Assembly (NCBI RefSeq): GCF_006345805.1
Contig: NC_043005.1
Coordinates: 14,384,001-14,448,000 of the forward strand
DNA length: 64,000 bases
Direction: 5' to 3'
DNA from: Octopus sinensis
Lineage: Eukaryota
Shown: positions 1,190 through 57,074 of the stretch, piece by piece
Layout of the letters: each line of letters starts with the position of its first letter
How positions within the stretch are numbered: the stretch's first letter is position 1
The notes under the pieces: generated by a model
What the model was told of the DNA's origin: nothing
What the model saw: only the letters and a program-made list of their open reading frames with translations
Database searches by the model: none
Translations under genes and position numbers: made by a program

Positions 1190-1535
1190 TTTTAACATTC
1201 TTCCACTTTTGGAATCTCGCCTGGAAGTTGTTTTCTGAGAGTGAGTAGAAGACCTTCTGCAATACACTGTTGATCTTGACAACAGTGTTAAAACACCAAC
1301 TTTTGAGCTGCTTTTTTCATCTTGAAGAAGAGGTGGAAGTCCGCAGGGGTAAAATGTGGTGAATAGGGCAGTTGCAGAAGTGATACCATGTTGTTTTTGA
1401 TGAGAAATTCACAAGTGAGGAGAGCTAGGTGATAGGTGCATTCTCATCGTGAAGAATGCAATTCTTCGGTTTCCACAGATCTGATCACTTTCACCCTCAA
1501 ATATTCTCCCTCAAATGCTTCAAAATGTTGTTGTT
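1190..1535 (-). mobile_element. Mariner transposase relic, C-terminal part
   Basis: Minus-strand translation gives LKHLRENI..LWKPKNCILHDENAP, resembling the mariner LHHDNAP..H motif, followed by a frameshifted PYSPDLAP.DF-like region. Confidence 0.7.
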
Positions 1536-2005
1536 CTCCGATGATCTTCGCATACAAACTTGAAATCTTCAAAGCCACAGTCGAACCAATTCTACTATAT
1601 GGCTCAGAAACCTGGACGTTATCAAAGAAGCTTGAGAGGCGGTTGGATGGAACCTACACTCGCCTCCTTATGAGAGCTCAAAATCTCTCGTGGAAGCGCC
1701 ATCCAACCAAAATGCAAATATATAGGAAACTACCACCGGTGTCATCTCTTGTGAAAGGTAAGAGAGTCCAGTTAGCTGGACATTGTTGTAGAGCTGAAAA
1801 AGAGGTAATTTCTACTCTTCTCCTCTGGAAGCCATCTACTCGCAATACCAGAGGGCGCACACTCTCCTACCCTGATGTAATCTCCAGGGATACAGGCATC
1901 CAGCAACAGGACCTCCATAATGCCATGATGGACCGTGAAGTCTGGCGTAGCATGGTAAATTCCATTGTCTCGACCATGGTCGAACAATGATGATGATGAT
2001 GATGA
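1536..2005 (+). mobile_element. 5'-truncated RTE-group LINE (C-terminal end of ORF plus (TGA)n tail)
   Basis: EIFKATVEPILLYGSETWTL..RRLDGTYTRLL within ORF 1436-1990; tail tgatgatgatga at 1988-2005. Confidence 0.85.
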
Positions 2006-2376: not shown

Positions 2377-2699
2377 TTTCTAATTTTCTTAAGCTGATGA
2401 ATCACACAATACACTCAGCATTGGTATTTTTAAGCACACAATGAGTTGATGATGGTAGCTTCCATCGATGGAACTCTTTCAGTTGCAGCTGTTATTATTT
2501 TTGCAACAGGAATCGACTTTTCTTTAACAAAACCTCTTTCACAGTAAGAAATATTGACTCTTCTTTTAGTATCTGTTGCCAAACATCTAACAAAGAATTC
2601 TTGTGCTATTTTTTCTTCTTTTATAAACTGACCATTAGCTAGCTGTGTGGCTTCATTCCCAGGTATTGTTAGGTGATTCATCCATCATCATCATTGCCA

Positions 2700-3105
2700 T
2701 CATCATCATCATCATCATCGTCATCATTTAACGTCTGTTTTCCATGGTGGCATAGGTTGGATGGCTTGACAGGAACTGGTTAGTTAAAGACCTGCTCAGG
2801 TTCCATGTTTGTTTTGGCATGGTTTCTGTGGCTGAATACCCTTCCTAATGCCAACACCTTTGTACTGGGTGTTCTTACATAACACCAGCATGAGTGCTCT
2901 CATGTGGCACTGGCACCTATGAGCCCACAAGATTAAGAATGTTCAGCTGAAGAGGGATGCAGGGGACATGCCTGTATGCAAGGACAACCACATATTTACT
3001 TAACTTGATGTGTCTTCTCAAGCACAGCAAACCACCAGAACTCTCGGTCTCCTGTCATCCCCTCTGTGAGGCCCAATGTCTGAAGATCCTTTCTCACCAC
3101 TGTTT
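2700..3105 (-). mobile_element. Degenerate RTE 3' end
   Basis: (CAT)n followed by ttaacgtc..ccatg..catagg, the reverse complement of the RTE tail found throughout the window. Confidence 0.7.
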
Positions 3106-3454
3106 CTAATGAAAACTGGACAATCATCCAAACATTTTTAACGGTGTCTTCCTCATAATTGTCCATTTCTTCAAATCATTGTTGTGTTATTGTATTCTAA
3201 GGAATTTTATTTTGTCTCTTCCTGGCTTGTGTAACACAGAACCTTACTAATGACTAGTAGACCCAATTCCTTGCCTATAGTATGTGGCTATGTTGCTTTC
3301 AGGATTTGACAATCAATAATTTTTGTAAGAGGCATGTAACACAATATTTTCTTGCTTTGATACAGACAGAAACATACATGACAATGTTGGCTGTTTATAA
3401 AAGAGGTCTCAAAGTGATTTAATTTAAAATAATCTGTATTTGTTTTACTCTCTC

Positions 3455-3858
3455 TCTTTTACTCTTTTACTTGTTTCAGTCAGTTGACTGCGGCCATGCT
3501 GGAGCACCACCTTTAGTCGAGCAAATCGACCCCGGGACTTATTCTTTGTAAGCCTGGTACTTATTCTATCGGTCTCTTTTGCCGAACCGCTAAGTGACGG
3601 GGACGTAAACACACCAGCATCAGTTGTCAAGCAATGCTAGAGGGACAAACACAGACACACAAACATATACACACACATGCATATATACATATATACATAT
3701 ATACGACAGGCTTCTTTCAGTTTCCGTCTACCAAATCCACTCACAAGGCTTTGGTTGGCCTGAGGCTATAGCAGAAGACACTTGCCCAAGATGCCACATA
3801 GTGGGACTGAACTCGGAACCATGTGGTTAGTTAGCAAGTTACTTACCACACAGCCACT
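3455..3858 (-). mobile_element. tRNA-derived SINE family 1 (internal TA/CA microsatellite, AAAAGAGT tail)
   Basis: Head AGTGGCTGTGTGGTAAG (box A), GTTCAGTCCC-like box B, CTTGGGCAAGTG; about 15 copies in the window. Confidence 0.9.
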
Positions 3859-9117: not shown

Positions 9118-11760
9118 CTTGTTGACAGGGGATGCAGGTCTTGGTCCACTCACCAATTTGTTTGGCCATACTGTGCCACATAAATTTGCTTGACAGCAAG
9201 TGCTGTGTGGCTCTAGTACCTGGGTTGGACGGTCTGTGAATGATGTCAAAACCTTCCTACGCCAGGATAATGGGATGATCGGTCATGGATTCCCAGGGAA
9301 TACATCATATAGTAGAGTTGTGCCATTGGAGCCAAAGTGCACATCCTGCAAGGAAAGTGACATGATGGTAGTGCGGTAAGCCCTGATCTCGTCATCTGTC
9401 TGTTGGGCTACAGTCATAGCCTTGTTATCCAGGCCTTCTGCTATTGGGGCTAGGTAGGTGTGAGAGCAGGTAAGGACACACGAGAGTGTGTCAGCGACTG
9501 GATTGCCTTTTCTGGCTATATGTTGGATGTACGAGGTGTACTCGGAAATGGCCGTGGTGTATTCAGATGTCCGTTGTGTACTCAGTTATCATTGCTGGCA
9601 TGCAGACCAAGGCTTTGAGAGCTCATAGGAAAGGTGAGTGATTTGTGGTCTGTGAACACTGTAAATTTGTGGCCTTCAAGAAAATGGCAACAGTGGCAGA
9701 CATCTAGCTGGACAACTAGCTGTTCCCTGTCAAAAGCACTGTACTTCTGTTCAGGAGGTCACTGTTGTTGACTGAAGAAAGCAAATAATCACCACTGACC
9801 ATTGATGTATTGTTCCAAAACACCCCCAATGGCTGTGTTGGAGGCATCATCTGTGAGTACAGTCCAAGATGCCATATGAGGATGGAACAGCATTGCTGCT
9901 TTAGCATGGTTGCTTGTTTTATGGATTTGAAGGCTGAGGTCATTGCACCATCCCACTCCACCTGTCTTTTTGAACCATCTTTTGATAGTGCCTTGTATAG
10001 GGGTCTCATCACTCTTGCTGCAGAAGAGATGATGCAATGGTAAAAGTTTATCATGCCCAGAAATTGGTGTAGAGCCTTGCTTGTGGTGGGAGTGTGGAAA
10101 GGATAAGATAGCTTTCGCTTTTTCTGGCAGGGGTGTAGCACCAACACCTGTGATTCAATGTCCCAGGAAGTTGATATCTGTGACACCAAAAACACGCTTT
10201 GTGGGGTTGATTACTAGGCCATACTGTTTCAGTCTATCAAAAAGAGTCACTAGGTGGTTCTTGTGTAGCTCTGCATTTTGGCTTGCAATAAGGATATTAT
10301 CTAAGAATGTAAAGACAAAATCAAGACCCCTGCAAATGGTGTCCATCAAACGTTGGAAGGATTGTGCTGCATTTTTCAGGCTAAAGGGTGTACATAGGAA
10401 TTCATACAGCCTGAAAGGAGTGATCACAGCAGTTTTCAGTACATCGTCGTCTTGTACTGGTATTTGGTGGTAACCTCAGATGCGGTTGACCTTTGAGAAA
10501 ACCAAGCACATGGCTAGCTGGGCAGAGAAGTCCTGTATGTGTGGAACGAGGTAGCAGTCGAGTATCATGTCTGCATTGAGACGGTGGTAATATCTGCATG
10601 ATTACCAACCTCCATTGAGTTTCGAGGCCACATGCAGGTGTGACAACCAGGGACTGCTTGGTCAGCAAACTATGCCCAAGGGCTCCATATTGTCAAACTT
10701 GGTCTTTGCAATAGCAAGTTTGTCTGGCAACAGACGATGTGTGTGGCTGTGAACTGGGGGGATGAGCAGTGATGGGCATGTGGTGTGTCGCTCTGTGGTG
10801 TGCTGTAGGTTTAGAGAATGTTGGAGTAATGAGATTGGGTGACTCACAAGGAGATTTGAGAATTCGTTTTCGGTCTGAGAGACGGTTGCTATGTGGCATG
10901 TGCAGATGTTTCCAGAGACATGGAAGCGTGTGTGCTGCTGTTGATGAGTTATCTCCCCTGCAAATCAATCAGTAGCAAGTGTGCTCGAAAACTGTCTGCC
11001 CCAAGAATCGGCTGATGGACATCGGCGATAGTGAATGTCCATGTGTATTTTTGTGAGTCGATGTTGAGAGAAAGAATGTGGTGACCATACACCTCAATTG
11101 TAGAACCATTGGCATCTGTTAAAGGTTGGCCCTGCTTTCCTTAACGGAGGTCTCTTACCAATGCTAGGATCACACTGACTTCTGTTCCTGTGTCAATGAA
11201 AAACCTACATCTGTAGCTCTGGCCATGGACATAGAGAAGCAGTTGATCGTGTCTGCCGACCACCAAGGTATTCAATGGTGGCCAGCCTTGGAGTTTCCTG
11301 GGCCTAATGGCCAAGGGATCCTGAAATTATATGGTTGTTTGCACTTCGTAGCCTTTCCCCCAAACTTGTGTAGAAGCACAGGTCATCTTGCTTAACTCTA
11401 CCATGATTCGGGGCTCACCCTATGATGTTGACCATAACACCATGGGATAAAAAATATTTGTTGGCTGCTTTTGCTAACTGCCGCAGGTCCTTGATCTCGG
11501 TCTGAGTTATGAGGGCTTGGACCTGGGGTGGTAACTTGTGGAGGAATATTTCCCTAAACAAAAAGGAAGGTAACTCACCAGGAGGAACTAATGCCAACAT
11601 CTTGCCCATCAACTCTGAAGGCTTAGAATCACCTAATTCTTCCTCCAGTATCTTGGCTGCCACTTCCCAGTTGCTCCACCAGAATGTATCCACCAGCTTG
11701 TCTTTTAACACGGTGTATGTATTTGTGTGTTGCTGGGGGGTTGGGTTAACATGTCTAGCA
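9118..11760 (-). mobile_element. Ty3/Gypsy LTR retrotransposon relic (gag-PR-RT-RNaseH-truncated INT), CsRn1-like by inference
   Basis: gag ELGDSKPSELMGKM; protease FFIDTGTEVSVI (about 11160-11210); RT TPF.LYEFL..PFSLKNAAQSFQRLMD..FLDNILI; RNase H TDDASNTAIGGVLEQ; integrase zinc finger FMWHSMAKQIGEWTKTCIPCQ. Many stops; LTRs not recognised. Confidence 0.9.
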
Positions 11761-12755: not shown

Positions 12756-12954
12756 ACTCTTACTCTTTTACTTGTTTCAGTCATTTGACTGCGGCCATGC
12801 TGGGGCACCGCCTTTAGTCGAGCAAATCGACCCCAGGACTTATTCTTTGTAAGCCTAGTACCTATTATATCGGTCTCTTTTGCTGAACCACTAAATAATG
12901 AGGACGTAAACACACCAGCATCGGTTGTCAAGCAATGCTAGGGTACAAACACAG

Positions 12955-13009
<55 letters not shown>

Positions 13010-13157
13010 TACGACAGGCTTCTTTCAGTTTCCGTCTACCAGATCCACTCACAAGGCATTGGTCGGCCCGGGGCTATAGCAGAAGACACTTGCCCAAGAT
13101 GCCACACAGTGGAACTGAACCCGGAACCATGTGGTTGGTTAGCAAGCTACTTACCAC
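12756..13157 (-). mobile_element. SINE family 1
   Basis: Near full-length match to the family; about 90 nt downstream of exon B. Confidence 0.9.
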
Positions 13158-19531: not shown

Positions 19532-19929
19532 AGTGGCTGTGTGGTAAGTAGCTTGCTAACCAACCACATGGTTCTGGGTTCAGTTCCACTGCGTGACATC
19601 TTGGGCAAGTGTCTTCTGCTATAGCTCCGGGCCGACCAATGCCTTGTGAGTGGTTTTAGTAGACAGAAACTGAAAGAACCTGTCGTATATATGTGTATAT
19701 ATATAAGTGTGTGTGTATATGTTTGTGTGTCTGTGTTTGTCCCCCTAGCATTGCTTGACAACCGATGCTGGTGTGTTTACATCCCCGTCACTTAGCGGTT
19801 CGGCAAAAAAGACCGATAGAATAAGTACTGGGCTTACAAAGAATAAGTCCCGGGGTCGATTTGCTCGACTAAAGGCGGTGCTCCAGCATGGCTGCAGTCA
19901 AATGACTGAAACAAGTAAAACAGTAAAAC
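19532..19929 (+). mobile_element. SINE family 1
   Basis: Full head, body and tail. Confidence 0.9.
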
Positions 19930-19949
19930 ATATATATATATATAACATC

Positions 19950-20331
19950 ATCGTTTAACGTCCACTTTCCATGCTGGCATGGATTGGATGGTTTGACTGA
20001 GGACTGGTGAGCCAGAGGCTGCACCAGGCTCAATCTGATCTGGCAAAGTTTCTACAGCTTGATGCCCTTCCTAATGCCAACTACTCTGAGAGTGTAGTGG
20101 GTGTTGTTATGTGACACCGGCACGAGGGCTGGTCAGGCAGTTCTGGCAACGACCACGCTCAAAAGGTGTTTTTTATGTGCTACCTGCACGGGAGCCGTGC
20201 GGTGGCACTGGCAATGACCCCGCTTGAATGTTGTTTTCACATGCCACTGGCACAGGTGCTGGTAATGATCATGCTCAAGTGGTGCTTTTCACGTGCCACT
20301 GCATGGGAGCCAATCCGTGGCCCTGGCAACG

Positions 20332-20391: not shown

Positions 20392-21680
20392 GTTTTTGTA
20401 TGTGGCAGATGCTCGGGAGCATTGACCTCCGAAGATCTGCAGAAAACAACTTCCGTCACTTTGCAAGGGGAAAAATTAGAAGTAGTTGATAGCTTCCGTT
20501 ATCTAGGTGACCAAGTCAGTAGTGGGGGTGGGTGCGCTGAGAGTGTAACTGCTAGAATAAGAATAGCCTGGGCAAAGTTTAGGGAGCTCTTACCTCTGCT
20601 GGTGACAAAAGGCCTCTCGCTCAGAGTAAAGGGCAGACTGTATGATGCATGTGTACGAACTGCCATGCTACATGGCAGTGAAACATGGGCCGTGACTGCT
20701 GAGGACATGCGTAAGCTCATGAGGAATGAAGCCAGTATGCTCCGATGGATGTGTAATGTCAGTGTACTTACTCGACAGAGCATTAGTTCCTTGAGAGAAA
20801 TGTTGTACCTAAGAAGCATCAGTTGTTGTGTGCAAGAGAGATGATTGCGCTGGTATGGTCATGTGGCGAGAATGGATGAAGATAGGTGTGTGAGAAAGTG
20901 CCAATCCCTAGCAGTTGAGGGAACCCGTGGAAGAGGTAGACCCAGGAAAACCTGGGACGAGGTGGTGAAGCACGACCTTCGAACGTTAGGTCTCACCATG
21001 GAAATGACTAGAGACCGAGACCTATGGAAGTATGCTGTGCGTGAGAAGACCCGGCAAGACTAGTGAAGCCATAACCCATGGCCACTACCTGGGACGTAGT
21101 CAGTCCACCTGTGCATACCTTCCTGCTTGTGATACTTGTGAAGACCTGTTGAGGCAAGTGAAAGTCAAGTCAAATCGAATCAAATCAAATAGATGAACAT
21201 CAATGGAATTTGTATCCTTGTGGTACCAGTGTCGGTGGCACATAAGAAAACCATCCGAACGAGACCGTAGCCAGTACCGCATTGACTGGCCCTGTGCTGT
21301 GGGCACGTAACAAACACCATCCGATCGTAGCCGTTCGCCAGCCTCGTCTGGCACCTGTGTCGGTGGCACATAAAAAACACCATCCGAGCGTGGCCGTCTG
21401 CCAGCCTCGTCTGGCACCTGTGTCTGTGGCACATAAAAAACACCATTCGAGCGTGACCGTCTGCCAGCCTCGTCTGGCACCTGTGTCGGTGGCACATAAA
21501 ATCACCCACTACACTCTCGGAGTGGTTGGCATTAGGGAGGGCATCCAGCTGTAGAAACACTGCCAGATCTGACTGGCCTAGTGCAGCCTTCGGGCTTGCC
21601 AGACCCCAGTTGAACCGTCCAACCCATGCTAGCATGGAAAGCGGACGTTAAACGATGATGATGATGATGATGATGATGAT
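20386..21680 (+). mobile_element. 5'-truncated RTE LINE: ORF end, 3'UTR with tandem modules, (GAT)n tail
   Basis: LEVVDSFRYLGDQV..ARIRIAWAKFRELLPLL..LHGSETW..RWYGHVARM..GRGRPRKTW; one internal stop at 20842-20844; UTR 21064-21680. Confidence 0.93.
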
Positions 21681-21699
21681 ATATATATATATCATCATC

Positions 21700-21860
21700 A
21701 TCATCATCATTGTTTAACGTCCATCTTCCATGCATGCATAGGTAGGATGGTTGACAGGAGGCAGCCAGGTAGAAAATACCCTGGGCTACTGTGTCTTTTT
21801 TGGCAGGGATTTTACAGCTGGATGCCTTTCCTAACATTAACCACTCTGCAGAGTGAACTT
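21700..21860 (-). mobile_element. RTE tail fragment, tail-to-tail with the previous element
   Basis: (ATC)n-gtttaacgtcc..catgcatg..ggatgcctttcctaac. Confidence 0.75.
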
Positions 21861-21865
21861 GGTGT

Positions 21866-22268
21866 TACTCTTACTCTTTTACTTGTTTCAGTCATTTGAC
21901 TGTGGCCATGCTGGAGCACAGCCTTTAGTCGAGCAAATCAATCCCAGGGCTTATTCTTTGTAAGCCTACTACTTATTATATCACTCTTTTGCCGAACCGC
22001 TAAGTTACGAGGACATAAACACACCAGCATCAGTTGTCAAGCGATGTTGTGGGAACAAACACAGACACAAACATATACACACACACATACATATATACAT
22101 ATATATGATGGGCTTCTTTCAGTTTCTGCATACCAAATCCACTCACAAGGCTTTGGTTGGCCCGAGGTTATAGTAGAAGACACTTGCCCAAGATGCCATG
22201 CAGTGGGACTGAACCCGGAACCATGTGGTTCATAAGGAAGCTACTTACCACACAGCCACTCCTACGCT
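21866..22268 (-). mobile_element. SINE family 1
   Basis: Full-length family match. Confidence 0.9.
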
Positions 22269-23999: not shown

Positions 24000-24358
24000 A
24001 TCATCATCATCGTTTAACGTCCGTTCTCCATGCTAGCATGGGTTGGACGGTTCGACCGGGGATCTGGGAAGCCAGAAGGCTGCACCAGGCTCCAGTCTTA
24101 TCTGGCAATGTTTCTACAGCTGGATGCCCTTCCTAATGCCAACGACTCCGTGAGTGTAGTGGGTGCTTTTTACGTGCCACCCGCACAGGTGCCAGACGGA
24201 GCTGGCAAACATCCACGGACGGATGGTGCTTTTTACGTGCCACTGCCACGGGGGCCAGGCGAGGCTGGCAACGGCCACGATCAGATGGTGCTTTTTACGT
24301 GCCACTGCCACGGGGGCCAGGCGAGGCTGGCAACGGCCACGAACAGATGGTGCTTTGT
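24000..24358 (-). mobile_element. RTE 3'UTR-only copy with three repeat modules
   Basis: Reverse complement of the RTE UTR, with GGTGCTTTTTACGTGCCAC repeated. Confidence 0.9.
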
Positions 24359-27690: not shown

Positions 27691-27930
27691 TGCTTTTTAT
27701 GTACCAGTGGCATGTAAAAAGCACCATCCAAACGTGGCCAATGTCAGCTCCTCTAGCCCTTGTGCCAGTGGCATGTAAAAAGCACCTACTACACTCTCAG
27801 ATTGGTTGGCATTAGGAAGAGCATCCAGCTGTAGAAACACTGCCAAATCAGATTGGGGCCTGGTGCAGCCTCCTGGCTTCCCGGACCCCAGTTGAACCGT
27901 CCGACCCATGCCAGCATGGAAAACAGATGT
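27691..27930 (+). mobile_element. RTE 3'UTR-only copy with a 5' foldback
   Basis: Two modules, the terminal domain and the ccatgccagcatgg hairpin. Confidence 0.85.
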
Positions 27931-27939
27931 AATAAGAAG

Positions 27940-29950
27940 AGAGAGAGAGAGAGAAATATTGCAAGACTGTGTGAGAGAGAATCGTGATGTCATAGGAGAG
28001 AAATGTGTCCGCATGGATGATGGCTCACTTACATTTAACGAGGCTGCAAAGAGAGAGACTTGGAGATGCCACTGTGAAAGGTTGCTAAACGAAGAGAATG
28101 AATGGGAGTAAGAGAGTTTGCCAAATGTCGACCCAACAGAGAGATCAACTATCCGAATTGACAGTACCTTGGTAGATAAAGCAATTAAAGGTATGAAGAC
28201 AGGGAAAGCCCCCAGCCCATCAGGAATCACTGCAGAGATGCTTAAAATATCTGGCAGTGTAGGCTATAGTCTAGTCACCTGTATAGTCAATCAGCTGATA
28301 CATGAAGGAGTCATACCCAATGACTAGCACAGCAGCACCCTAGTCAACTGCTACAAAGGTAAATGTGACGCATTAGGTATCAAGTTGTTGGATCATATGA
28401 TGAAAGTCATGGAGAGGGTCATAGCCCAACTAATTAAGAAGAGAGTTAGTTTAGATGAGATGCAGTTTGGGTTTGTGCTATATTTCTGGTAAGACAACTG
28501 CAGGAGAAATACTTAGCCAACGATAAACCTCTATACTTGGCTTTTGTTGACATGGAGACAGCTTTTGACAGGGTCCCCCGATCCCTTATCTGGTGGTCAA
28601 TGCAGAAGCTAGAGATAAATGAGTGATTAGTGAGAGCTTTACAAGCTATATACAGGGATGCTGTCAGTAAGGTGAGGGTTGACAATGAGTATAGTGAAGA
28701 ATTCTGGATAGGGGTCCACCAAAGATCAGTCCTCAGTCCCCTCTTATTCATCATAGTCCTCCAGGCAATAACAGAGGAATTCAAAACAGGATGCCCCCAG
28801 GAGCTCCTCTATACTGATGACCTTGCTCTAATAGCTGAGTCACTATCAGAACTAGAGGAGAAGTACTAGGTGTGAAAGCAAGGTCTAGAATCGAAGGGCC
28901 TTAGAGTCAATCTAACAAAAAACAAATCCCTTTAGGTTGATGGCCCTGTTTGATCTGTAGAGAAGGCATAGCTAGATGTACCTGGTATAAACTATGGACA
29001 CATAAGAGGTGCAGCAATATCCAAAGGGTTTAGAAAACAGCTTCCGTCACATACCAGGGGAAAAACTAGAAGTAGTTGATAGCTTCTGTTACCTAGGTGA
29101 CCAAGTCAGTAGTGTAGCTGCCAGAATAAGAATAGCCTGGGCAAAGTTCAGAGAGCTACTACTTCTACTGGTAACAAAGGGCCTCTCACTCAGAGTGAAA
29201 GGTAGACTACAATGCATGTGTGCAAACAGCCATGCTACACATCAGTGAAATATGGGTCGTGACTACTGAGGACATGCATAAGCTTGCAAGAAATGAAGCT
29301 TGTATGCTCTGCTGGATGTGTACTGTCAGTGTACATACACAATAGACTATAAGCACCCTGAGAGAAAAGTTGGACATAAGAAGCATCAGATGTGTGTGCA
29401 AGAGAGACAACTGCACTGGTATGGTCATGTGTTGCATGTGGATGAGGACAGCTGTATTAAAAAGTGTCACACCCTGACAGTGGAGGTAACCTGTGGAAGA
29501 GGTAGGCCCAGGAAGACCTGGGATGAGGTGGTGAAGCATGACCTTTGAACATTGGGCCTCATGGAAGCAACGGCAAGTAACCGAGTCCTTTGGAAATATG
29601 CTGTGCTTGAGAAGACTCGGCAAGCCAAGTGAGACCATAACTGGCCTATGCCTGTGTTGCATAACCGGCCCATTTAAAAGTAATCTTCAATCGTTGGGCA
29701 ATAAACTGTGTTTGAGAAGACCTGTTGAGTCAAGTGAAATCATTGTTGTGGCTGACGCCAGAACTGCCTGACTGGCACCCACTACACTCATGGAATGGTT
29801 GGCAGTAGAAAGGGCATCCAACTGTAGAAACCAAACCAGATCAGATTGGAGCTTGGTGTAGCTTTCTGGCTTGCCAGTCCTCAGTCAAACCATCTAACCC
29901 ATACCAACATGGAAAGCAGATGTTAAATGATGCTGATGATGATGATGATG
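27940..29950 (+). mobile_element. About 2-kb RTE LINE relic (RT domain to tail)
   Basis: KAIKGMKTGKAPSPSGITAEMLK; IGVHQRSVLSPLLFIIV; ELLYTDDLALIAES; WYGHV; tail. Multiple stops and frameshifts. Confidence 0.92.
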
Positions 29951-31330: not shown

Positions 31331-31713
31331 AAGCTTGCTTACAAACCATATGGTTCCAGGTTCAGTCCCACTGCATGGCATCTTGGGCAAGTGTCTTCTA
31401 CTATAGCCTTGGGCCAACTAAAGCCTTGTGAGTGGATTTGGTAGACGGAAACTGAAAGAAGCCTGTCATATATATGTATATCTATGTGTGTGTCTATGTG
31501 TTTGTGTGTCTGTGTTTGTTCCCCCAACATCGCTTGACAACCGATGCTGGAGTGTTTACACCCCTGTAAGTTAGCGGTTTGGCAAAAGAGATCGATAGAA
31601 TAAGTACTAGGCTTACAAAGAATAAGTCCTGGGGTTGATTTGCTTGACTAAAGGCAGTGCTCCAGCATGGCCACTGTCAAAATTACTGAAACAATTAAAA
31701 GAGTAAAAGAGTA
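31331..31713 (+). mobile_element. SINE family 1
   Basis: Family match; first few nucleotides missing. Confidence 0.88.
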
Positions 31714-33155: not shown

Positions 33156-33564
33156 TGTTTAAAGACATTTGAATGAAAATTTCAAGGTTTATATTTTTAA
33201 CTCACAAATGACCCTCATTATTCCATTCTTTTCTTAAATTTTACTTTATATTTATCCAATTCTCATCAAACAGTTTTATGAAGTGACCTAAATTGTTGAA
33301 ACCCTTTACATTAGAAACAGCTTAGATTTAGCATTTTATCTCATCTTCAGCAGGAACCAGAATGGTTAAGTAAGCCTAGTTTCTGTACTGCTTTACCCCC
33401 TCCCCATATCTCCCTTTCCCCCTCTTCTCTCTCCCTCTTGAAATGGAATGTAAATTCATCTGTTGACTGTATTCTATAATCTATTCCAACCCAGTTTATA
33501 AAGCAACCTGGAAAATAAATTGAAATATTTAAACAAATCTATTTAATTTATTTTCTTAAATATT

Positions 33565-33915
33565 TGTGGCTGTTGCCAGCCTCGCCTGGCCCCCGTGCCG
33601 GTGGCACCTAAAAAGCACCTGCTAATTGTGGCCGTTGCCAGCCTCGCCTGGCCCCCGTGCCGGTGGCACGTAAAAAGCACCATCCGTCCGTGGCCGTTTG
33701 CCAGCTCCGTCTGGCACCTGTGCGGGTGGCACGTAAAAAGCACCCACTACACTCACGGAGTGGTTGGCATTAGGAAGGGCATCCAGCCGTAGAAACACTG
33801 CCAGATCAGACTGGGCCTGATGCAGCCTTCTGGCTTCACAGACCCCAGTTGAACCATCCAATCCATGCTAGCATGGAAAACGGACACTAAATGATGATGA
33901 TGATGATAATGATGA
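33565..33915 (+). mobile_element. RTE 3'UTR-only copy with three modules
   Basis: GTGC.GGTGGCAC.TAAAAAGCACC at 33595, 33657 and 33720. A further tail fragment lies at 34020-34172. Confidence 0.9.
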
Positions 33916-38777: not shown

Positions 38778-39181
38778 TAGGCGTAGGAGTGGCTGTGTGG
38801 TAAGTAGCTTGCTTACCAACCACATGGTTCCGGGTTCAGTCCCACTGCGTGGCACCTTGGGCAAGTGTCTTTTACTATAGCCTCTGGCCGACCAAAGCCT
38901 TGTGAGTGGATTTGGTAGATGGAAACTGAAAGAAGCCCATCGTATATATGTATATATATACGTGTGTGTGTGTGTATGTTTGTGTGTCTGTGTTTGTCCC
39001 TCAACATCGCTTGAGAACCGATGCTGGTGTGTTTACGTCCCCGTAACTTAGCAGTTTGGCAAAAGAGAACGATAGAATAAGTACTAAGCTTATAAAGAAT
39101 AAGTCTTGGGGTCGATTTGCTCGACTAAAGGCGGTGCTCCAGCATGGCCTCAGTCAAATGACTGAAACAAGTAAAAGAGTA
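38778..39181 (+). mobile_element. SINE family 1
   Basis: Full length. Confidence 0.92.
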
Positions 39182-40645: not shown

Positions 40646-40886
40646 GTGAGAATATATTTTTAGGGGCTCCCCTCATCTTCCTATTTTTTCAATGTAAATA
40701 TGCAAACATTGAAATATTAGATGTGTGACCAGTCAAGTTCATCAAATGTTATCTCATCACCTGACTCAGGTACTCCTGCTCCTTGACAAACATACTCAAC
40801 TCTACATCCACGTCACCTTCCTGGCAAAACAGGATCTTTTAATTTTCTCCATATCATGCTTCTCTTAATTCAATTGAAACTATTAT

Positions 40887-41290
40887 GCTGGCTCTGTGCC
40901 GGTGGCACATAAAAAGCACAATCCGAACGTGGCTGATGCCAGCGCCGCCTCAACTGGTTTCTGTGCCGGTGGCACATAAAAGGCACCATCTGAACGTGGT
41001 CAATGCCAGCGCCACCTCGACTAGCTTCTGTGCCGGTGGCACATAAAAAGCACCATCCGAACGTGGCCGATGCCAGCGCCGCCTTGGCTGGCTTCCGTGC
41101 TGGTGGCACGTTAAAAGCACCCACAATACTCGCGGAGTGGTTGGCATTAGGAAGGGCATCTAGCTGTAGAAACACTGCCAGATCAGACTGGATCCTGGTG
41201 CAGCCTTTTGGCTTCCGAGACCCCGGTCGAACCGTCCAACCCGTGCTAGCGCAGAAAACAGACGTTAAACGATGATGATGATGATGATGC
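40887..41290 (+). mobile_element. RTE 3'UTR-only copy with four modules at exact 67-nt spacing
   Basis: GTGC at 40896, 40963, 41030 and 41097. Confidence 0.92.
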
Positions 41291-41505
41291 TATGTCACTA
41301 GAGATTGCCTTTTTGATTCACTTGAGTTACCTTTCTGCAAACAACAATAACTTGAGTTAATTTTTCTGTGGGTTTTCTTACTACTACAGTTGGGGTCTCA
41401 TAGATTTTTTTTTTTCACACCAAAATTTCAAAAAGTATTTAATGTGCGACTTATTCACCACCTCAGTTGAGCACATTAAGTCTATATAACTTTAAATAGG
41501 TACAA

Positions 41506-47422: not shown

Positions 47423-47800
47423 CCATCGTTTAATGTCCGCTTTCCATGCTGGCATGGGTTGGACGGTTTGACTGGGGACTGGCAAACCAGATGGCTGCAC
47501 CAAGCTCCAATCTGATCTGGCAGAGTTTCTACAGCTGGATGCCCTTCCTAATGCCAACCACTCCGCGAGTGTAGTGGGTGCTTTTTGCGTGCCACCTGCA
47601 CAGGTGCCAGGGGGGTCCGGCATCGGTCACGATCAGTTGGTGCTTTTAACGTGCCACCGGCACGGAAGCCAACCAAGGCGATGCTGGCATCGGCCACGTT
47701 CGGATGGTGCTTTTTATGTGCCACCGGCACAGAAGCCAGTCGAGGTGGCGCTAGCATCGGCCACGTTCGGATGGTGCTTTTTATGTGCCACCAGCACTAC
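47392..47800 (-). mobile_element. RTE 3'UTR-only copy with four modules
   Basis: Modules at 47577, 47639, 47706 and 47773. Confidence 0.92.
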
Positions 47801-50220: not shown

Positions 50221-50409
50221 ATGGTGAGGGGGATAAATACAGACACACAAATACATACATACATACATGCATACATATATATATGTATGTATGTATAATA
50301 TATATATATATATAGTCCTGGGGATAATTTGTTTGACTAAAGGAGGTGCTCCAGCATGGCCACAGTCAAATTACTGAAACAAGTAAATGAATAAAAGAAT
50401 ATATGTAAA

Positions 50410-50580
50410 ATCAGCCCAATCTGCAGAGTGGTTGGTGTTAGGAAGGGCATCCAGCTGTAAAAACCATGCCAAAACAGGTGCGGAGGAATGGCGCCGGGTC
50501 CCGTCTGGCCAACTGCTGTCAAACCGTCCAACCCATGCCAGCATGGAAGGAGGACGTTAAATGTTGATGACAGTGATGAT
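50410..50580 (+). mobile_element. RTE tail fragment
   Basis: ggttggtgttaggaagggcatccagctgta..cccatgccagcatgg..gacgttaaatg. Confidence 0.8.
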
Positions 50581-50754
50581 GAAAATACTGAAGGAACTAA
50601 AAGAAGACAAAAATAATTAGTGATAAGAGTGAAAATGAGAAGGTGATGAGGATAGAAGCCTGGAGAGAGGTAAAGTACCATATTTAAAATACGTACTGGG
50701 GTCAAATTGATGGGCTAAAGCACTTCAAGATGATATCCTAATATGGCTGCAGTC

Positions 50755-53839: not shown

Positions 53840-54220
53840 AGGAGTGGCTGTGTGGTAAGAAGCTTGCTTACCAACCACATGGTTCCAGATTCAGTCCCAT
53901 TGCGTGGCACCTTGGGTAAGTATCTTCTACTATAGCATTGGGCCAACTAAAGCCTTGTGAGTGGATTTGGTAGACAGAAACTGAAAGAAGCCCGTCGTAC
54001 ATATATGTGTATGTGTGTGTTTGTGTGTCTGTGGTTGTCCCCCATCCTTGCTTGACAACCAATGCTGGTGTGTTTACATCCCCCTTAACTTAGCAGTTAG
54101 GCAAAAGAGACCGATAGAATAAGTACTAGGCTTACAAAGTATAAGTTCTGGGGTCGATTTGTTTGACTAAAGGCAGTACTCCAGTATGGGTGCAGTCAAA
54201 TGACTGAAATAAAAAAAAAA
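53840..54220 (+). mobile_element. SINE family 1
   Basis: Full length. Confidence 0.88.
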
Positions 54221-56650: not shown

Positions 56651-56652
<2 letters not shown>

Positions 56653-56853
56653 CTCTTTTACTTGTTTCAGTCATTTGACTGCGGCCATGCTGGAGCACCG
56701 CCTTTAGTCGAGCAAATCGACCCTGGGACTTATTATTTGTAAGCCCAGTACTTATTCTATCAGTCTCTTTTGCCGAACCGCTAAGTGACGGGGACGTAAA
56801 CACACCAGCATCAGCTGTCAAGCAATGCTAGGGGGACAAACACAGACACACAA

Positions 56854-56908
<55 letters not shown>

Positions 56909-57074
56909 TACGACAGGCTTCTTTCAGTTTCTGTCTACCAAATCCACTTACAAGGCATTGGTCGGCCCGGGGCTATAGCAGAAGACACTTGCCCAAGATG
57001 CCACGCAGTGGGACTTAACCTGGAACCATGTGGTTGGTTAGCAAGCTACTTACCACACAGCCACTCCTGCGCCT
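56651..57074 (-). mobile_element. SINE family 1
   Basis: Full length with an expanded internal (TA)n. Confidence 0.92.

What the first reader, a model, noticed from the sequence alone, without database searches (positions are those of the whole stretch)
40887..41121. Tandem arrays of a compact H-type pseudoknot module in RTE 3'UTRs
Seen: each 62-67 nt unit begins GUGC-N-GGUG-GCAC-RUAAAAAG-CACC. This folds as S1 GUGC/GCAC, a 1-nt L1, S2 GGUG/CACC, no L2, and an 8-nt A-rich L3. Across copies (21357, 24162-, 32398, 33595/33657/33720, 36759, 40963/41030/41097, 47577/47639/47706/47773-) N is C, G, U or A, which argues against a simple GUGCC/GGCAC hairpin. Most stem substitutions in well-preserved copies are G-U compatible (GUGU/GCAC, GGUG/CAUC, GUGC/GUAC), although some older units break a stem. 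Established: this short-L1 / A-rich-L3 layout resembles luteoviral frameshift and preQ1-I pseudoknots. Inference: the LINE 3'UTR carries a selected, repeated tertiary-structure module that could block exonucleases, bind the ORF protein or define RNA ends. I know of no description of it, but I could not search.
Basis: partly seen in the sequence, partly recalled or inferred. Interest (0 to 1): 0.8.

Follow-up and report, generated by a model that had tools for sequence, protein, structure and literature searches.

The report
Tandem hairpin repeats in octopus LINE
The repeats are real: an octopus LINE retrotransposon carries a variable number of tandem 62-67-nt units in its 3'UTR, each with a short conserved hairpin. 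Sequence comparison does not support the proposed pseudoknot, so this looks like an ordinary variable repeat, not a new RNA fold.

Summary
Observation confirmed. Window 40888-41121 holds 3.5 tandem 67-nt units, and the 25-nt motif GTGC-N-GGTG-GCAC-RTAAAAAG-CACC occurs 20 times in the window against 0 expected. Each array lies between the stop codon of a LINE reverse-transcriptase ORF and a conserved ~165-nt tail that ends in (GAT)n. The host is an Octopus species.

The H-type pseudoknot is not supported. Across 76 units, S2 (GGUG/CACC) shows no compensatory change: 27 cells are unpaired and 3 are G-U. Propagated unit types have lost CACC (AACC, ACCC, or deleted) yet keep the hairpin. N is C or U in 86% of units and can pair with G9. 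RNAalifold returns only a 6-bp hairpin, Y-GUGYN / GGU / GGCAC-R. Two related LINE families (67-72% aa identity) carry a single longer version of this hairpin, with a C-G to U-A swap and with G6 inside the stem.

A third relative has no array at all. A few octopus copies, including two SINE-plus-tail composites, also lack the array or the hairpin. The array therefore looks like an accessory, copy-number-variable 3'UTR repeat. The shared 3' module is a terminal two-tier hairpin plus (GAU)n.

Nearest-neighbour energies and motif conservation do not exclude the pseudoknot. No Rfam family or paper matches. Interest is low to moderate.

The parts
40888..41121 (+). Tandem array, 3.5 units of 67 nt. 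This is copy c40, which is 5'-truncated inside the array.
   Evidence: TRF; sequence; self-BLAST (homology to other copies starts at about 40885).
40895..40909 (+). Hairpin B of unit 1 (U-GUGCC / GGU / GGCAC-A). Equivalent hairpins lie at 40962-40976, 41029-41043 and 41096-41110.
   Evidence: RNAalifold consensus; pair counts; single-unit fold.
40910..40920 (+). It is conserved but shows no pairing signal.
   Evidence: Conservation 0.90-0.95. S2 counts. In unit 1 of this array CACC is CACA.
40938..40958 (+). Hairpin A, GCCAG-(6-12 nt variable loop)-CUGGY. Further copies at 41005-41025 and 41072-41092.
   Evidence: Arms 0.92-0.96 conserved and loop 0.65. 92.7% paired with no compensatory change. 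C>T and G>A are symmetric, so RNA-level selection is not shown.
41122..41270 (+). Conserved non-repeated 3' tail shared by all subfamilies and by the SINE-plus-tail composites.
   Evidence: BLAST; alignment and RNAalifold of 29 tails.
41241..41254 (+). Terminal hairpin, CCAUGC-UA-GCAUGG in the consensus and CCGUGC-UA-GCGCAG in this copy. It is closed by CGUCC/GGACG.
   Evidence: pairs 172-175 with 182-185; one G-C for A-U swap. The relative L012 keeps only this module (z=-2.2).
41271..41289 (+). (GAT)6 microsatellite at the 3' end of the element.
   Evidence: TRF; present at the end of nearly all copies.
20401..21062 (+). RT C-terminal ORF of the LINE (copy c21). It has an in-frame TGA at about 20845 and its stop at about 21062.
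   Evidence: 459 homologues at E<=1e-10, including Octopus bimaculoides proteins at 77-94% identity.
21063..21220 (+). Unique part of the 3'UTR between the stop codon and the array (copy c21).
   Evidence: Homologous stretches precede the arrays in L001, L003, L004, L008 and L010.
21221..21507 (+). Array of copy c21: 5 units of 63-65 nt of types 1, 2, 3, 3 and last.
47577..47797 (-). Array of copy c47: 4 motifs, 62-67-nt units.
33564..33744 (+). Array of copy c33: 3 motifs, 62-nt units.
24162..24356 (-). Array of copy c24: 3 motifs, 62-nt units. Two units read GTGGCAG.
20099..20330 (-). Array of copy c20: 4 degenerate units. The second unit lacks a proper CACC.

Best explanation
The feature is an accessory, copy-number-variable tandem repeat in the 3'UTR of an Octopus LINE family. 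The family is RTE-like and ends in (GAU)n, not poly(A).

Shown. Each 62-67-nt unit carries a conserved 25-nt island. Its only comparatively supported structure is a local stem-loop of 5-6 bp, Y-GUGYN / GGU / GGCAC-R, followed by an A-rich tract and CACC. A second conserved inverted repeat, GCCAG-loop-CUGGC, lies upstream in each unit. Unit number ranges from fewer than one complete unit to 6 between copies and subfamilies. The 3' module shared by all related families is the terminal two-tier hairpin (CGUCC/GGACG around CCAUGC-NN-GCAUGG) plus GGACGUUAAAC(GAU)n.

Inferred. (1) The terminal module, not the array, is what the reverse transcriptase recognises for target-primed reverse transcription. 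(2) The array grows and shrinks by slippage, unequal exchange or RT template switching between units. (3) Active lineages keep the hairpin because the sense-strand RNA stem matters, most plausibly as reiterated binding or packaging sites for the element's own protein, or as a structured spacer that stabilises a non-polyadenylated RNA. The GGUG/CACC complementarity is inherited sequence, not a selected second stem.
For: Context: ORF, stop, unique UTR, array, tail and (GAT)n run in that order in c21 and L001. The same upstream UTR lies before the arrays of other subfamilies.

Hairpin:
- RNAalifold on 41 units predicts only the 6-bp hairpin.
- On 76 units aligned with a sequence-only model, the inner four pairs are 94.6% paired and the outer pair reads UA 21, UG 20, CG 16, other 13. 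Covariation exceeds all but 16 of 500 shuffles.
- In the S1 stem columns C>T is 31/226 and G>A is 7/220. In the tail the two are symmetric, 103/1235 and 88/1115.
- Propagated stem variants (GUGU in c21-type units, GCAU in the 3-unit family) are G-U compatible.
- Relatives L011 (GUGCCG-8 nt-CGGCAC) and L002 (GUGUCG-8 nt-CGACAC) keep the hairpin through a C-G to U-A double change.

Against S2:
- No double changes and 27 unpaired cells against 3 G-U; the counts equal the shuffles.
- C>T is 4, G>A is 15 and transversions are 16.
- S2b is AACC in the first units of the c21 family, ACCC in L009 units, and deleted in the middle unit of the 3-unit family.

Accessory nature:
- L012 (69% aa identity) runs from the ORF straight into the terminal hairpin with no array.
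- SINE-plus-tail composites lack the array.
- Three copies have the hairpin removed between TGGCAC/GCAC direct repeats.
- Unit number varies, and L009 shows a two-unit higher-order duplication.
Against: Support for the hairpin is modest.
- The shuffle statistic (12-16 of 500) falls in a range the tool itself says unstructured related sequences reach in 5-25% of trials.
- Both positions of the covarying outer pair are CpG sites.
- Much of the C>T excess is one inherited variant (C4>U), so independent events are few.
- In whole-3'UTR partition functions the local hairpin usually has probability of about 0.3 or less (two units reach 0.5), because inter-unit pairings compete.
- The array folds no better than shuffles (z = -0.2 sense, -1.0 antisense).

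A bare hairpin does not explain why the GGU loop (0.91), the A tract (0.90) and CACC (0.95) are as conserved as the stems. Nearest-neighbour energies put a 4+4-bp pseudoknot in about the same range as the 6-bp hairpin (plus pseudoknot penalties from my own knowledge). Any function for the array is inference only. The copies without an array are few and may have lost it after insertion.
Confidence: 0.6

Rival explanations
1. Each unit folds into a compact H-type pseudoknot: S1 GUGC/GCAC, 1-nt L1, S2 GGUG/CACC, A-rich L3 in the S1 minor groove. It is selected as an exonuclease block, a protein-binding module or an end-defining module.
For: The consensus allows it, and both stems are intact in 29 of 60 curated units, including nearly all of the least diverged ones. 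The GGU loop, the A tract and CACC are as conserved as the stems. S1-only and S2-only helices are each about -4.5 kcal/mol, so a pseudoknot could rival the hairpin energetically. L011 keeps AUCACC downstream of its hairpin.
Against: S2 has no compensatory change in 76 units and its paired fraction equals the shuffles. Its departures are 27 unpaired against 3 G-U. Propagated variants AACC, ACCC and a CACC deletion persist in multi-copy lineages. G6>A from CpG decay (10 cells) is about as frequent as N5 C>T (17 cells), so G6-C25 is not protected. N is C or U in 86-88% of units and pairs with G9, which S2 also needs. In L002 and L011, G6 is paired within a 6-8-bp hairpin, and L002 has AACC. No Rfam pseudoknot family matches, even at E<=10.
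Confidence: 0.12
2. The array is a neutral tandem repeat with no RNA-level function. The hairpin is just an inherited near-palindrome (GTGCCGGTGGCAC), and its apparent G-U bias comes from a few inherited CpG-type transitions.
For: Array folding energy equals the shuffles. Hairpin A shows symmetric C>T and G>A. The covariation statistics are borderline and rest on CpG sites. Copies and relatives without the array exist. Copy number is variable.
Against: The hairpin persists, with a C-G to U-A swap, in LINE families only 67-72% identical in protein whose surrounding UTR has diverged. All unit types keep it while other segments, such as the hairpin-A loop and CACC, are replaced or lost. Unit order (type 1-2-3-last) is conserved among independent c21-family copies.
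Confidence: 0.23
3. The near-palindromic units pair with each other, within one RNA or between two RNAs, to form long imperfect duplexes. Such duplexes could drive RNA dimerisation or packaging, or serve as dsRNA substrates such as ADAR targets.
For: The MFE and partition function of whole arrays prefer inter-unit pairing of GUGCCGGUGGCAC segments over local hairpins.
Against: The z-scores are about 0, so these duplexes are no better than expected for the composition. The single-copy relatives L002 and L011 keep the hairpin without any partner unit. No covariation test favours inter-unit pairs.
Confidence: 0.05

Closest known systems
Stringent-type LINE 3' ends: eel UnaL2 and zebrafish ZfL2 stem-loop plus short tandem-repeat tail (Kajikawa & Okada 2002; own knowledge, also cited in PMC4758252)
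   Same: A LINE RNA without poly(A) that ends in a short tandem repeat, here (GAU)n, preceded by a conserved stem-loop. The tail is shared with SINE-like composites.
   Different: The counterpart of the UnaL2 stem-loop here is the terminal CCAUGC-NN-GCAUGG hairpin, not the repeated unit. The repeated hairpin lies 170-500 nt upstream, is reiterated from less than once to 6 times, and is absent from a related family and from the composites.
Internal variable tandem repeats of retrotransposons, such as the SVA VNTR and mouse L1 5' monomers (own knowledge)
   Same: Tandem units of tens of nucleotides inside a retroelement's non-coding part. Copy number differs between copies and subfamilies. Gain and loss occur by slippage or recombination.
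   Different: These units sit in the 3'UTR of an autonomous LINE, and each contains a conserved short stem-loop that is also present as a single copy in related families.
Luteoviral (BWYV-type) frameshift pseudoknots and preQ1-I riboswitch pseudoknots
   Same: On paper the layout matches: a short GC-rich S1, a 1-nt L1, a short S2 and an A-rich L3.
   Different: There is no Rfam match. S2 is not supported by comparison. The site is more than 160 nt downstream of the stop codon, so it is not a frameshift site. The host is an animal transposon, not a bacterial 5'UTR.
TMV upstream pseudoknot domain, three tandem pseudoknots in the 3'UTR of a non-polyadenylated RNA (own knowledge)
   Same: Reiterated small structured modules in the 3'UTR of an RNA that lacks poly(A). 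This would be the functional analogy if the modules bind a factor.
   Different: Pseudoknot formation is unsupported here. No tRNA-like end is present and no binding partner is known.
R2 element 3'UTR, the structured protein-binding RNA used for target-primed reverse transcription (own knowledge)
   Same: A LINE 3'UTR structure recognised by the element's protein.
   Different: R2 has a single complex fold next to the 3' end. Here the repeated unit is dispensable in relatives.

Membership tests
H-type RNA pseudoknot (frameshift / preQ1-I-like layout) | Stem 1 supported by sequence comparison | tested here: met
   S1 is 96-97% paired. Its departures are mostly G-U (29 G-U plus 2 U-A against 9 unpaired). 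C-G changes to U-A in relatives. S1 is, however, equally part of a plain hairpin.
H-type RNA pseudoknot (frameshift / preQ1-I-like layout) | Stem 2, pairing of the hairpin loop with the downstream strand, supported by covariation or tolerated only with compatible changes | tested here: not met
   No double changes, and 27 unpaired against 3 G-U. All measures lie within the shuffles (243/500 and 133/500). Propagated variants AACC, ACCC and the CACC deletion break it.
H-type RNA pseudoknot (frameshift / preQ1-I-like layout) | L1 nucleotide unconstrained and not pairing across the S1 loop | tested here: not met
   N is C 41, U 12, A 4, G 2 of 59. N-G9 forms C-G 47, U-G 17 and other 10.
H-type RNA pseudoknot (frameshift / preQ1-I-like layout) | Tertiary fold shown by probing, Mg2+ dependence or a solved structure | not testable with these tools
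   Only nested-structure thermodynamics are available. Hairpin -8 to -9 kcal/mol; S1-only -4.5 and S2-only -4.6.
Rfam pseudoknot, ribozyme or xrRNA families | Covariance-model match | tested here: not met
   No hit at gathering score over the 64-kb window. At E<=10 over 40800-41320 the only hit is a spurious snoR43 match on the microsatellite.
LINE (non-LTR retrotransposon) 3'UTR | Lies downstream of an RT ORF stop codon, on the same strand and within one contiguous repeat copy | tested here: met
   c21: ORF 20401-21062, array 21221-21507, tail, (GAT)n. The independent contig L001 has the same order.
LINE (non-LTR retrotransposon) 3'UTR | Copies variably 5'-truncated with a common 3' end | tested here: met
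   All copies end at (GAT)n and start at different points in the array, tail or UTR.
RTE clade of LINEs | RT phylogeny groups with RTE; single ORF with an APE endonuclease | tested here: inconclusive
   Only the 220-aa C-terminus is present. It is 24% identical (E=1e-4) to the RTE-2_OV-like ORF at 1436-1990. The microsatellite tail is typical of RTE (PMC9115989), but L2-type LINEs have one too (own knowledge). No phylogeny was run.
Tandem repeat / VNTR | Head-to-tail units whose number varies between copies | tested here: met
   TRF. Fewer than one complete unit up to 6 units per copy.

The most novel reading that the evidence does not exclude
The conserved 25-nt island (hairpin, GGU loop, A tract and CACC) is a reiterated functional RNA module. 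It could be the proposed compact pseudoknot, or a sequence-specific protein-binding hairpin with a 3' A-rich extension. Multiplied in tandem, it would stabilise a non-polyadenylated LINE RNA or load it with protein, much as the tandem pseudoknots in some plant-virus 3'UTRs do.
Probability: 0.12. Interest if true: 0.6.

Novelty: new member of a known kind. Interest (0 to 1): 0.25.

Why it matters
If the hairpin units are functional, they would be a reiterated cis element in an abundant octopus LINE family. The octopus TE literature consulted here reports recent LINE and SINE activity (PMC9115989, PMC13282606). Such an element could help explain how RNAs that end in microsatellites, and not in poly(A), are stabilised or packaged.

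As things stand, the practical value is mostly annotational:
- The 3'UTR architecture is defined as unique UTR, variable array, tail, terminal hairpin and (GAU)n.
- Several 'hypothetical proteins' of the Octopus vulgaris annotation turn out to be antisense translations of these arrays.
- An attractive pseudoknot drawn on a repeat consensus fails once propagated variants and related families are compared.

Tried and rejected
1. Rfam: a gathering-score scan of the whole window and an E<=10 scan of 40800-41320 found nothing relevant.
2. JGI metagenome scans: the tail probe gave 0 hits, and the motif probe gave one chance match in a bacterial-looking contig (L006). The IMG/VR scan gave 0 hits.
3. 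L007 (P0068): its 3' flank is unrelated, so it is uninformative.
4. Whole-array thermodynamic folding: z is about 0 on both strands, so it gives no evidence either way.
5. Hairpin A (GCCAG/CUGGC) as a selected stem: the arms are conserved and the loop is variable, but there are no compensatory changes and C>T and G>A are symmetric. Left as unproven.
6. An inter-unit helix GGUGGC/GCCRCC is possible only in the 67-nt unit type, so it was rejected as a general feature (sequence reading).
7. A GCUU/AAGC helix closing the hairpin appears in the MFE of the 67-nt type only and is not conserved in other types.
8. A tRNA-like origin of the unit: ARAGORN finds nothing in the window.
9. A poly(A)-signal reading of CAUAAA/AAAAAG in the A tract was considered but has no supporting data.
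10. Literature searches for the motif and tail sequences, and for LINE 3'UTR pseudoknot arrays, found no description.

Full report
**1. What is at the coordinates**

Window 40888-41121 is a tandem array of 3.5 units of 67 nt (TRF: 85% matches, score 349). Each unit starts with GTGC-N-GGTG-GCAC-RTAAAAAG-CACC. With up to 3 mismatches this 25-mer occurs 20 times in the 64-kb window, against 0 in 100 dinucleotide shuffles.

**2. Context**

Self-BLAST shows about a dozen copies of one repeat family in the window. All of them end at a (GAT)n microsatellite, and they begin at different points.

Copy c21 extends furthest upstream. In order it holds:
- a reverse-transcriptase C-terminal ORF at 20401-21062, with one in-frame TGA;
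- about 160 nt of unique UTR;
- five repeat units;
- a conserved tail of about 165 nt;
- (GAT)n.

An independent ENA contig (L001, 92% aa identity) has the same order. Homologous unique-UTR sequence also precedes the arrays of other subfamilies in Octopus vulgaris loci.

The ORF has 459 homologues at E<=1e-10, including Octopus bimaculoides proteins at 77-94% identity. Antisense translations of the arrays are annotated as 'hypothetical proteins' in O. vulgaris. The host is therefore an Octopus species, and the arrays lie in a LINE 3'UTR.

The RTE-clade label is plausible, because microsatellite tails are typical of RTE (PMC9115989). It is not verified. The C-terminus is only 24% identical (E=1e-4) to the RTE-2_OV-like ORF at 1436-1990, whose stop abuts a microsatellite as that paper describes.

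**3. More copies**

I used the O. vulgaris pseudo-proteins to fetch six 20-kb genomic loci. I curated 60 units by hand. I then built a sequence-only covariance model from 41 full units. That model recovered 76 units in 188 kb and aligned them without reference to any structure.

**4. Test of the pseudoknot**

In the 60 curated units S1 (GUGC/GCAC) is intact in 48, S2 (GGUG/CACC) in 33, and both in 29.

| Measure on the 76-unit alignment | S1 | S2 |
|---|---|---|
| G-U cells | 29 | 3 |
| Compensated cells | 2 (U-A) | 0 |
| Unpaired cells | 9 | 27 |
| C>T | 31/226 | 4/198 |
| G>A | 7/220 | 15/221 |
| Transversions | 4 | 16 |

Pair counts are and the substitution spectrum. None of the whole-structure measures exceeds the column shuffles (243/500 and 133/500, and likewise). 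In the non-repeated tail C>T and G>A are symmetric, 103/1235 and 88/1115.

Variants that are shared by independent insertions must have propagated through active elements. For S2 they are all disruptive:
- The first unit of the c21 family has AACC, giving G-A (w21, L001, L003, L004).
- The L009 array has ACCC.
- The middle unit of a 3-unit family has lost CACC altogether but keeps GUGCYGGUGGCAU.

G6>A, which is CpG decay, occurs in 10 cells. That is similar to N5 C>T, the other product of the same CpG, at 17 cells. G6-C25 is therefore not protected.

**5. What the comparison supports instead**

N is C in 41, U in 12, A in 4 and G in 2 of 59 units. N-G9 forms C-G or U-G in 64 of 74 units.

RNAalifold on the 41 full units returns a single helix, the 6-bp hairpin Y-GUGYN / GGU / GGCAC-R. 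Its outer pair alternates between U-A (13), C-G (12) and U-G (10), with 5 C-A. On 76 units this pair is UA 21, UG 20, CG 16, other 13. The covariation score exceeds all but 16 of 500 shuffles, and 12 of 500 on the 41-unit set. This is weak evidence, for two reasons. The tool warns that unstructured related sequences reach such values in 5-25% of trials. Both positions of the pair are also CpG sites.

Stronger support comes from two related LINE families (67% and 72% aa identity) found on ENA contigs. They carry one homologous unit each:
- L011: U-GUGCCG-GUGUGUCG-CGGCAC-A, followed by UAAAAAUCACC.
- L002: AU-GUGUCG-GUGUGUCA-CGACAC-AU, followed by UAAAAUAACC.

Between them the stem is kept through a C-G to U-A double change at position 4. 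G6 is paired inside the stem, and S2b is CACC in one and AACC in the other.

**6. Caveats on the hairpin**

- The GGU loop, the A tract and CACC are as conserved as the stems (0.90-0.95 against 0.92-0.94, compared with 0.62-0.71 for spacers and the hairpin-A loop). A bare hairpin does not explain this. It leaves room for sequence-specific recognition or for the pseudoknot.
- The nested MFE of a unit is the 6-bp hairpin, at -8 to -9 kcal/mol. S1-only and S2-only helices are about -4.5 each. With typical pseudoknot penalties (my own knowledge) a pseudoknot would be of similar stability, so energies do not decide.
- In the whole 3'UTR the local hairpin mostly has predicted probability of about 0.3 or less, with two units near 0.5, because the near-palindromic units can pair with each other.
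- The array folds no better than shuffles (z = -0.2 sense, -1.0 antisense).

**7. Is the array needed?**

- A third relative (L012, 69% aa identity) has no array and almost no UTR. Its ORF runs straight into CGUCC-AAC-CCAUGC-AC-GCAUGG-...-GGACG-UAAAAC-(GAU)n (z=-2.2).
- The same two-tier terminal hairpin closes every octopus tail. Its stem is invariant and its loop is variable.
- Two copies (window 21685-22260 minus strand and 50314-50582) join an abundant tRNA-derived SINE body directly to this tail, with no array.
- Three copies have lost the hairpin through deletions between TGGCAC or GCAC direct repeats (L010:380-425, L009:18703-18744, window near 29755).
- Unit number ranges from fewer than one complete unit to 6, and L009 shows a two-unit higher-order duplication.

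I therefore infer that the terminal module is the reverse-transcription recognition element. The array is an accessory repeat that changes by slippage or template switching.

**8. Comparison with known systems**

No Rfam family matches. No paper in the library contains the motif or tail sequences or describes such arrays.

The closest known things are:
- the stringent-type LINE 3' ends, a stem-loop plus a tandem-repeat tail as in UnaL2, for the terminal module;
- VNTR-like internal repeats of retroelements, for the array.

The resemblance to luteoviral or preQ1-I pseudoknots is limited to a layout drawn on the consensus, and the defining S2 test failed.

**9. Verdict**

The context is right: a LINE 3'UTR, with the RTE clade unverified. 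The pseudoknot is not supported, though no experiment has excluded it; I give it about 0.12. The best reading is a variable tandem repeat whose units carry a modestly supported short hairpin of unknown, probably accessory, function. It is a new member of a known kind, of low to moderate interest.

Noticed in passing
window 1436-2005 (+): The C-terminal ORF of a different LINE (...LLYGSETW...MVEQ*) has its stop codon directly against an (ATG/GAT)n microsatellite. [quoted passage not shown] It is only 24% identical to the RT of the array-bearing family.
   Followed up: partly
window 21685-22260 (-) and 50314-50582 (+): Composite elements in which the body of an abundant tRNA-derived SINE of about 390 nt is joined to the LINE tail and (GAT)n, with no array. 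Two copies share the same junction.
   Followed up: partly
window 3456-3858, 12756-13157, 19532-19926, 31332-31709, 38788-39181, 53843-54218, 56651-57065 and others: At least 10 copies of the ~390-nt SINE lie in 64 kb. It contains the motif GGTGTGTTTACGTCCCCGTMAC, whose reverse complement gave weak spurious hits in my approximate motif scan. ARAGORN calls no tRNA in the window.
   Followed up: partly
window 41225-41270; L012:570-615; alignment A4 columns 160-195: The terminal module is a two-tier stem-loop, CGUCC/GGACG around CCAUGC-NN-GCAUGG, with a variable loop (UA, CA, AU, AC, AA). Copy c40 has an A-U to G-C swap in the inner stem. The copy at 29755 has CAUCU/AGAUG in place of CGUCC/GGACG, so both pairs are compensated, although both sites are CpG.
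   Followed up: partly
L008:3812-4359 (-): Four head-to-tail copies (137-nt period) of the distal tail segment lie next to a normal element copy. This is a satellite-like expansion of the tail itself.
   Followed up: no
P0121-P0127 (O. vulgaris GCA_951406725.2); window 21180-21635 (-) and 27697-28230 (-): The antisense strand of array plus tail is open in one frame. It is annotated as 'hypothetical predicted protein' several times in the O. vulgaris genome. These are almost certainly annotation artefacts.
   Followed up: partly
window 2690-3250 (-); L004:17990-18760 (-); L008:600-700 (+): An older, related LINE family has its own RT C-terminus and a 3'UTR holding 1-3 shorter degenerate modules of about 25 nt (for example GCUGGUGCUGUGUUAUCGCACC and GCUGGUGUUAUGUAAGAACACC). 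In these GGUGY/RCACC can form a small hairpin without S1. It is the only hint in favour of GGUG/CACC pairing, and it rests on single copies.
   Followed up: partly
L010:380-425, L009:18703-18744, window 29740-29790: Recurrent deletions between the direct repeats TGGCAC...TGGCAC (or GCAC...GCAC) remove the hairpin, and in one case also the A tract and CACC, from the last unit.
   Followed up: partly
window 9716-10195 (-): A 159-aa ORF (...LHQFLGMINFYHCIISSAARVMRPLYKAL...) looks like a fragment of an LTR-retrotransposon pol.
   Followed up: no
L002:1160-1230: The related family's 3'UTR holds a second GUGCC-7 nt-GGCAC hairpin and a perfect 12-bp palindrome, AAGAAUCACCAAGCUUGGUGAUUCUU, upstream of its (AUC)n tail.
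   Followed up: no
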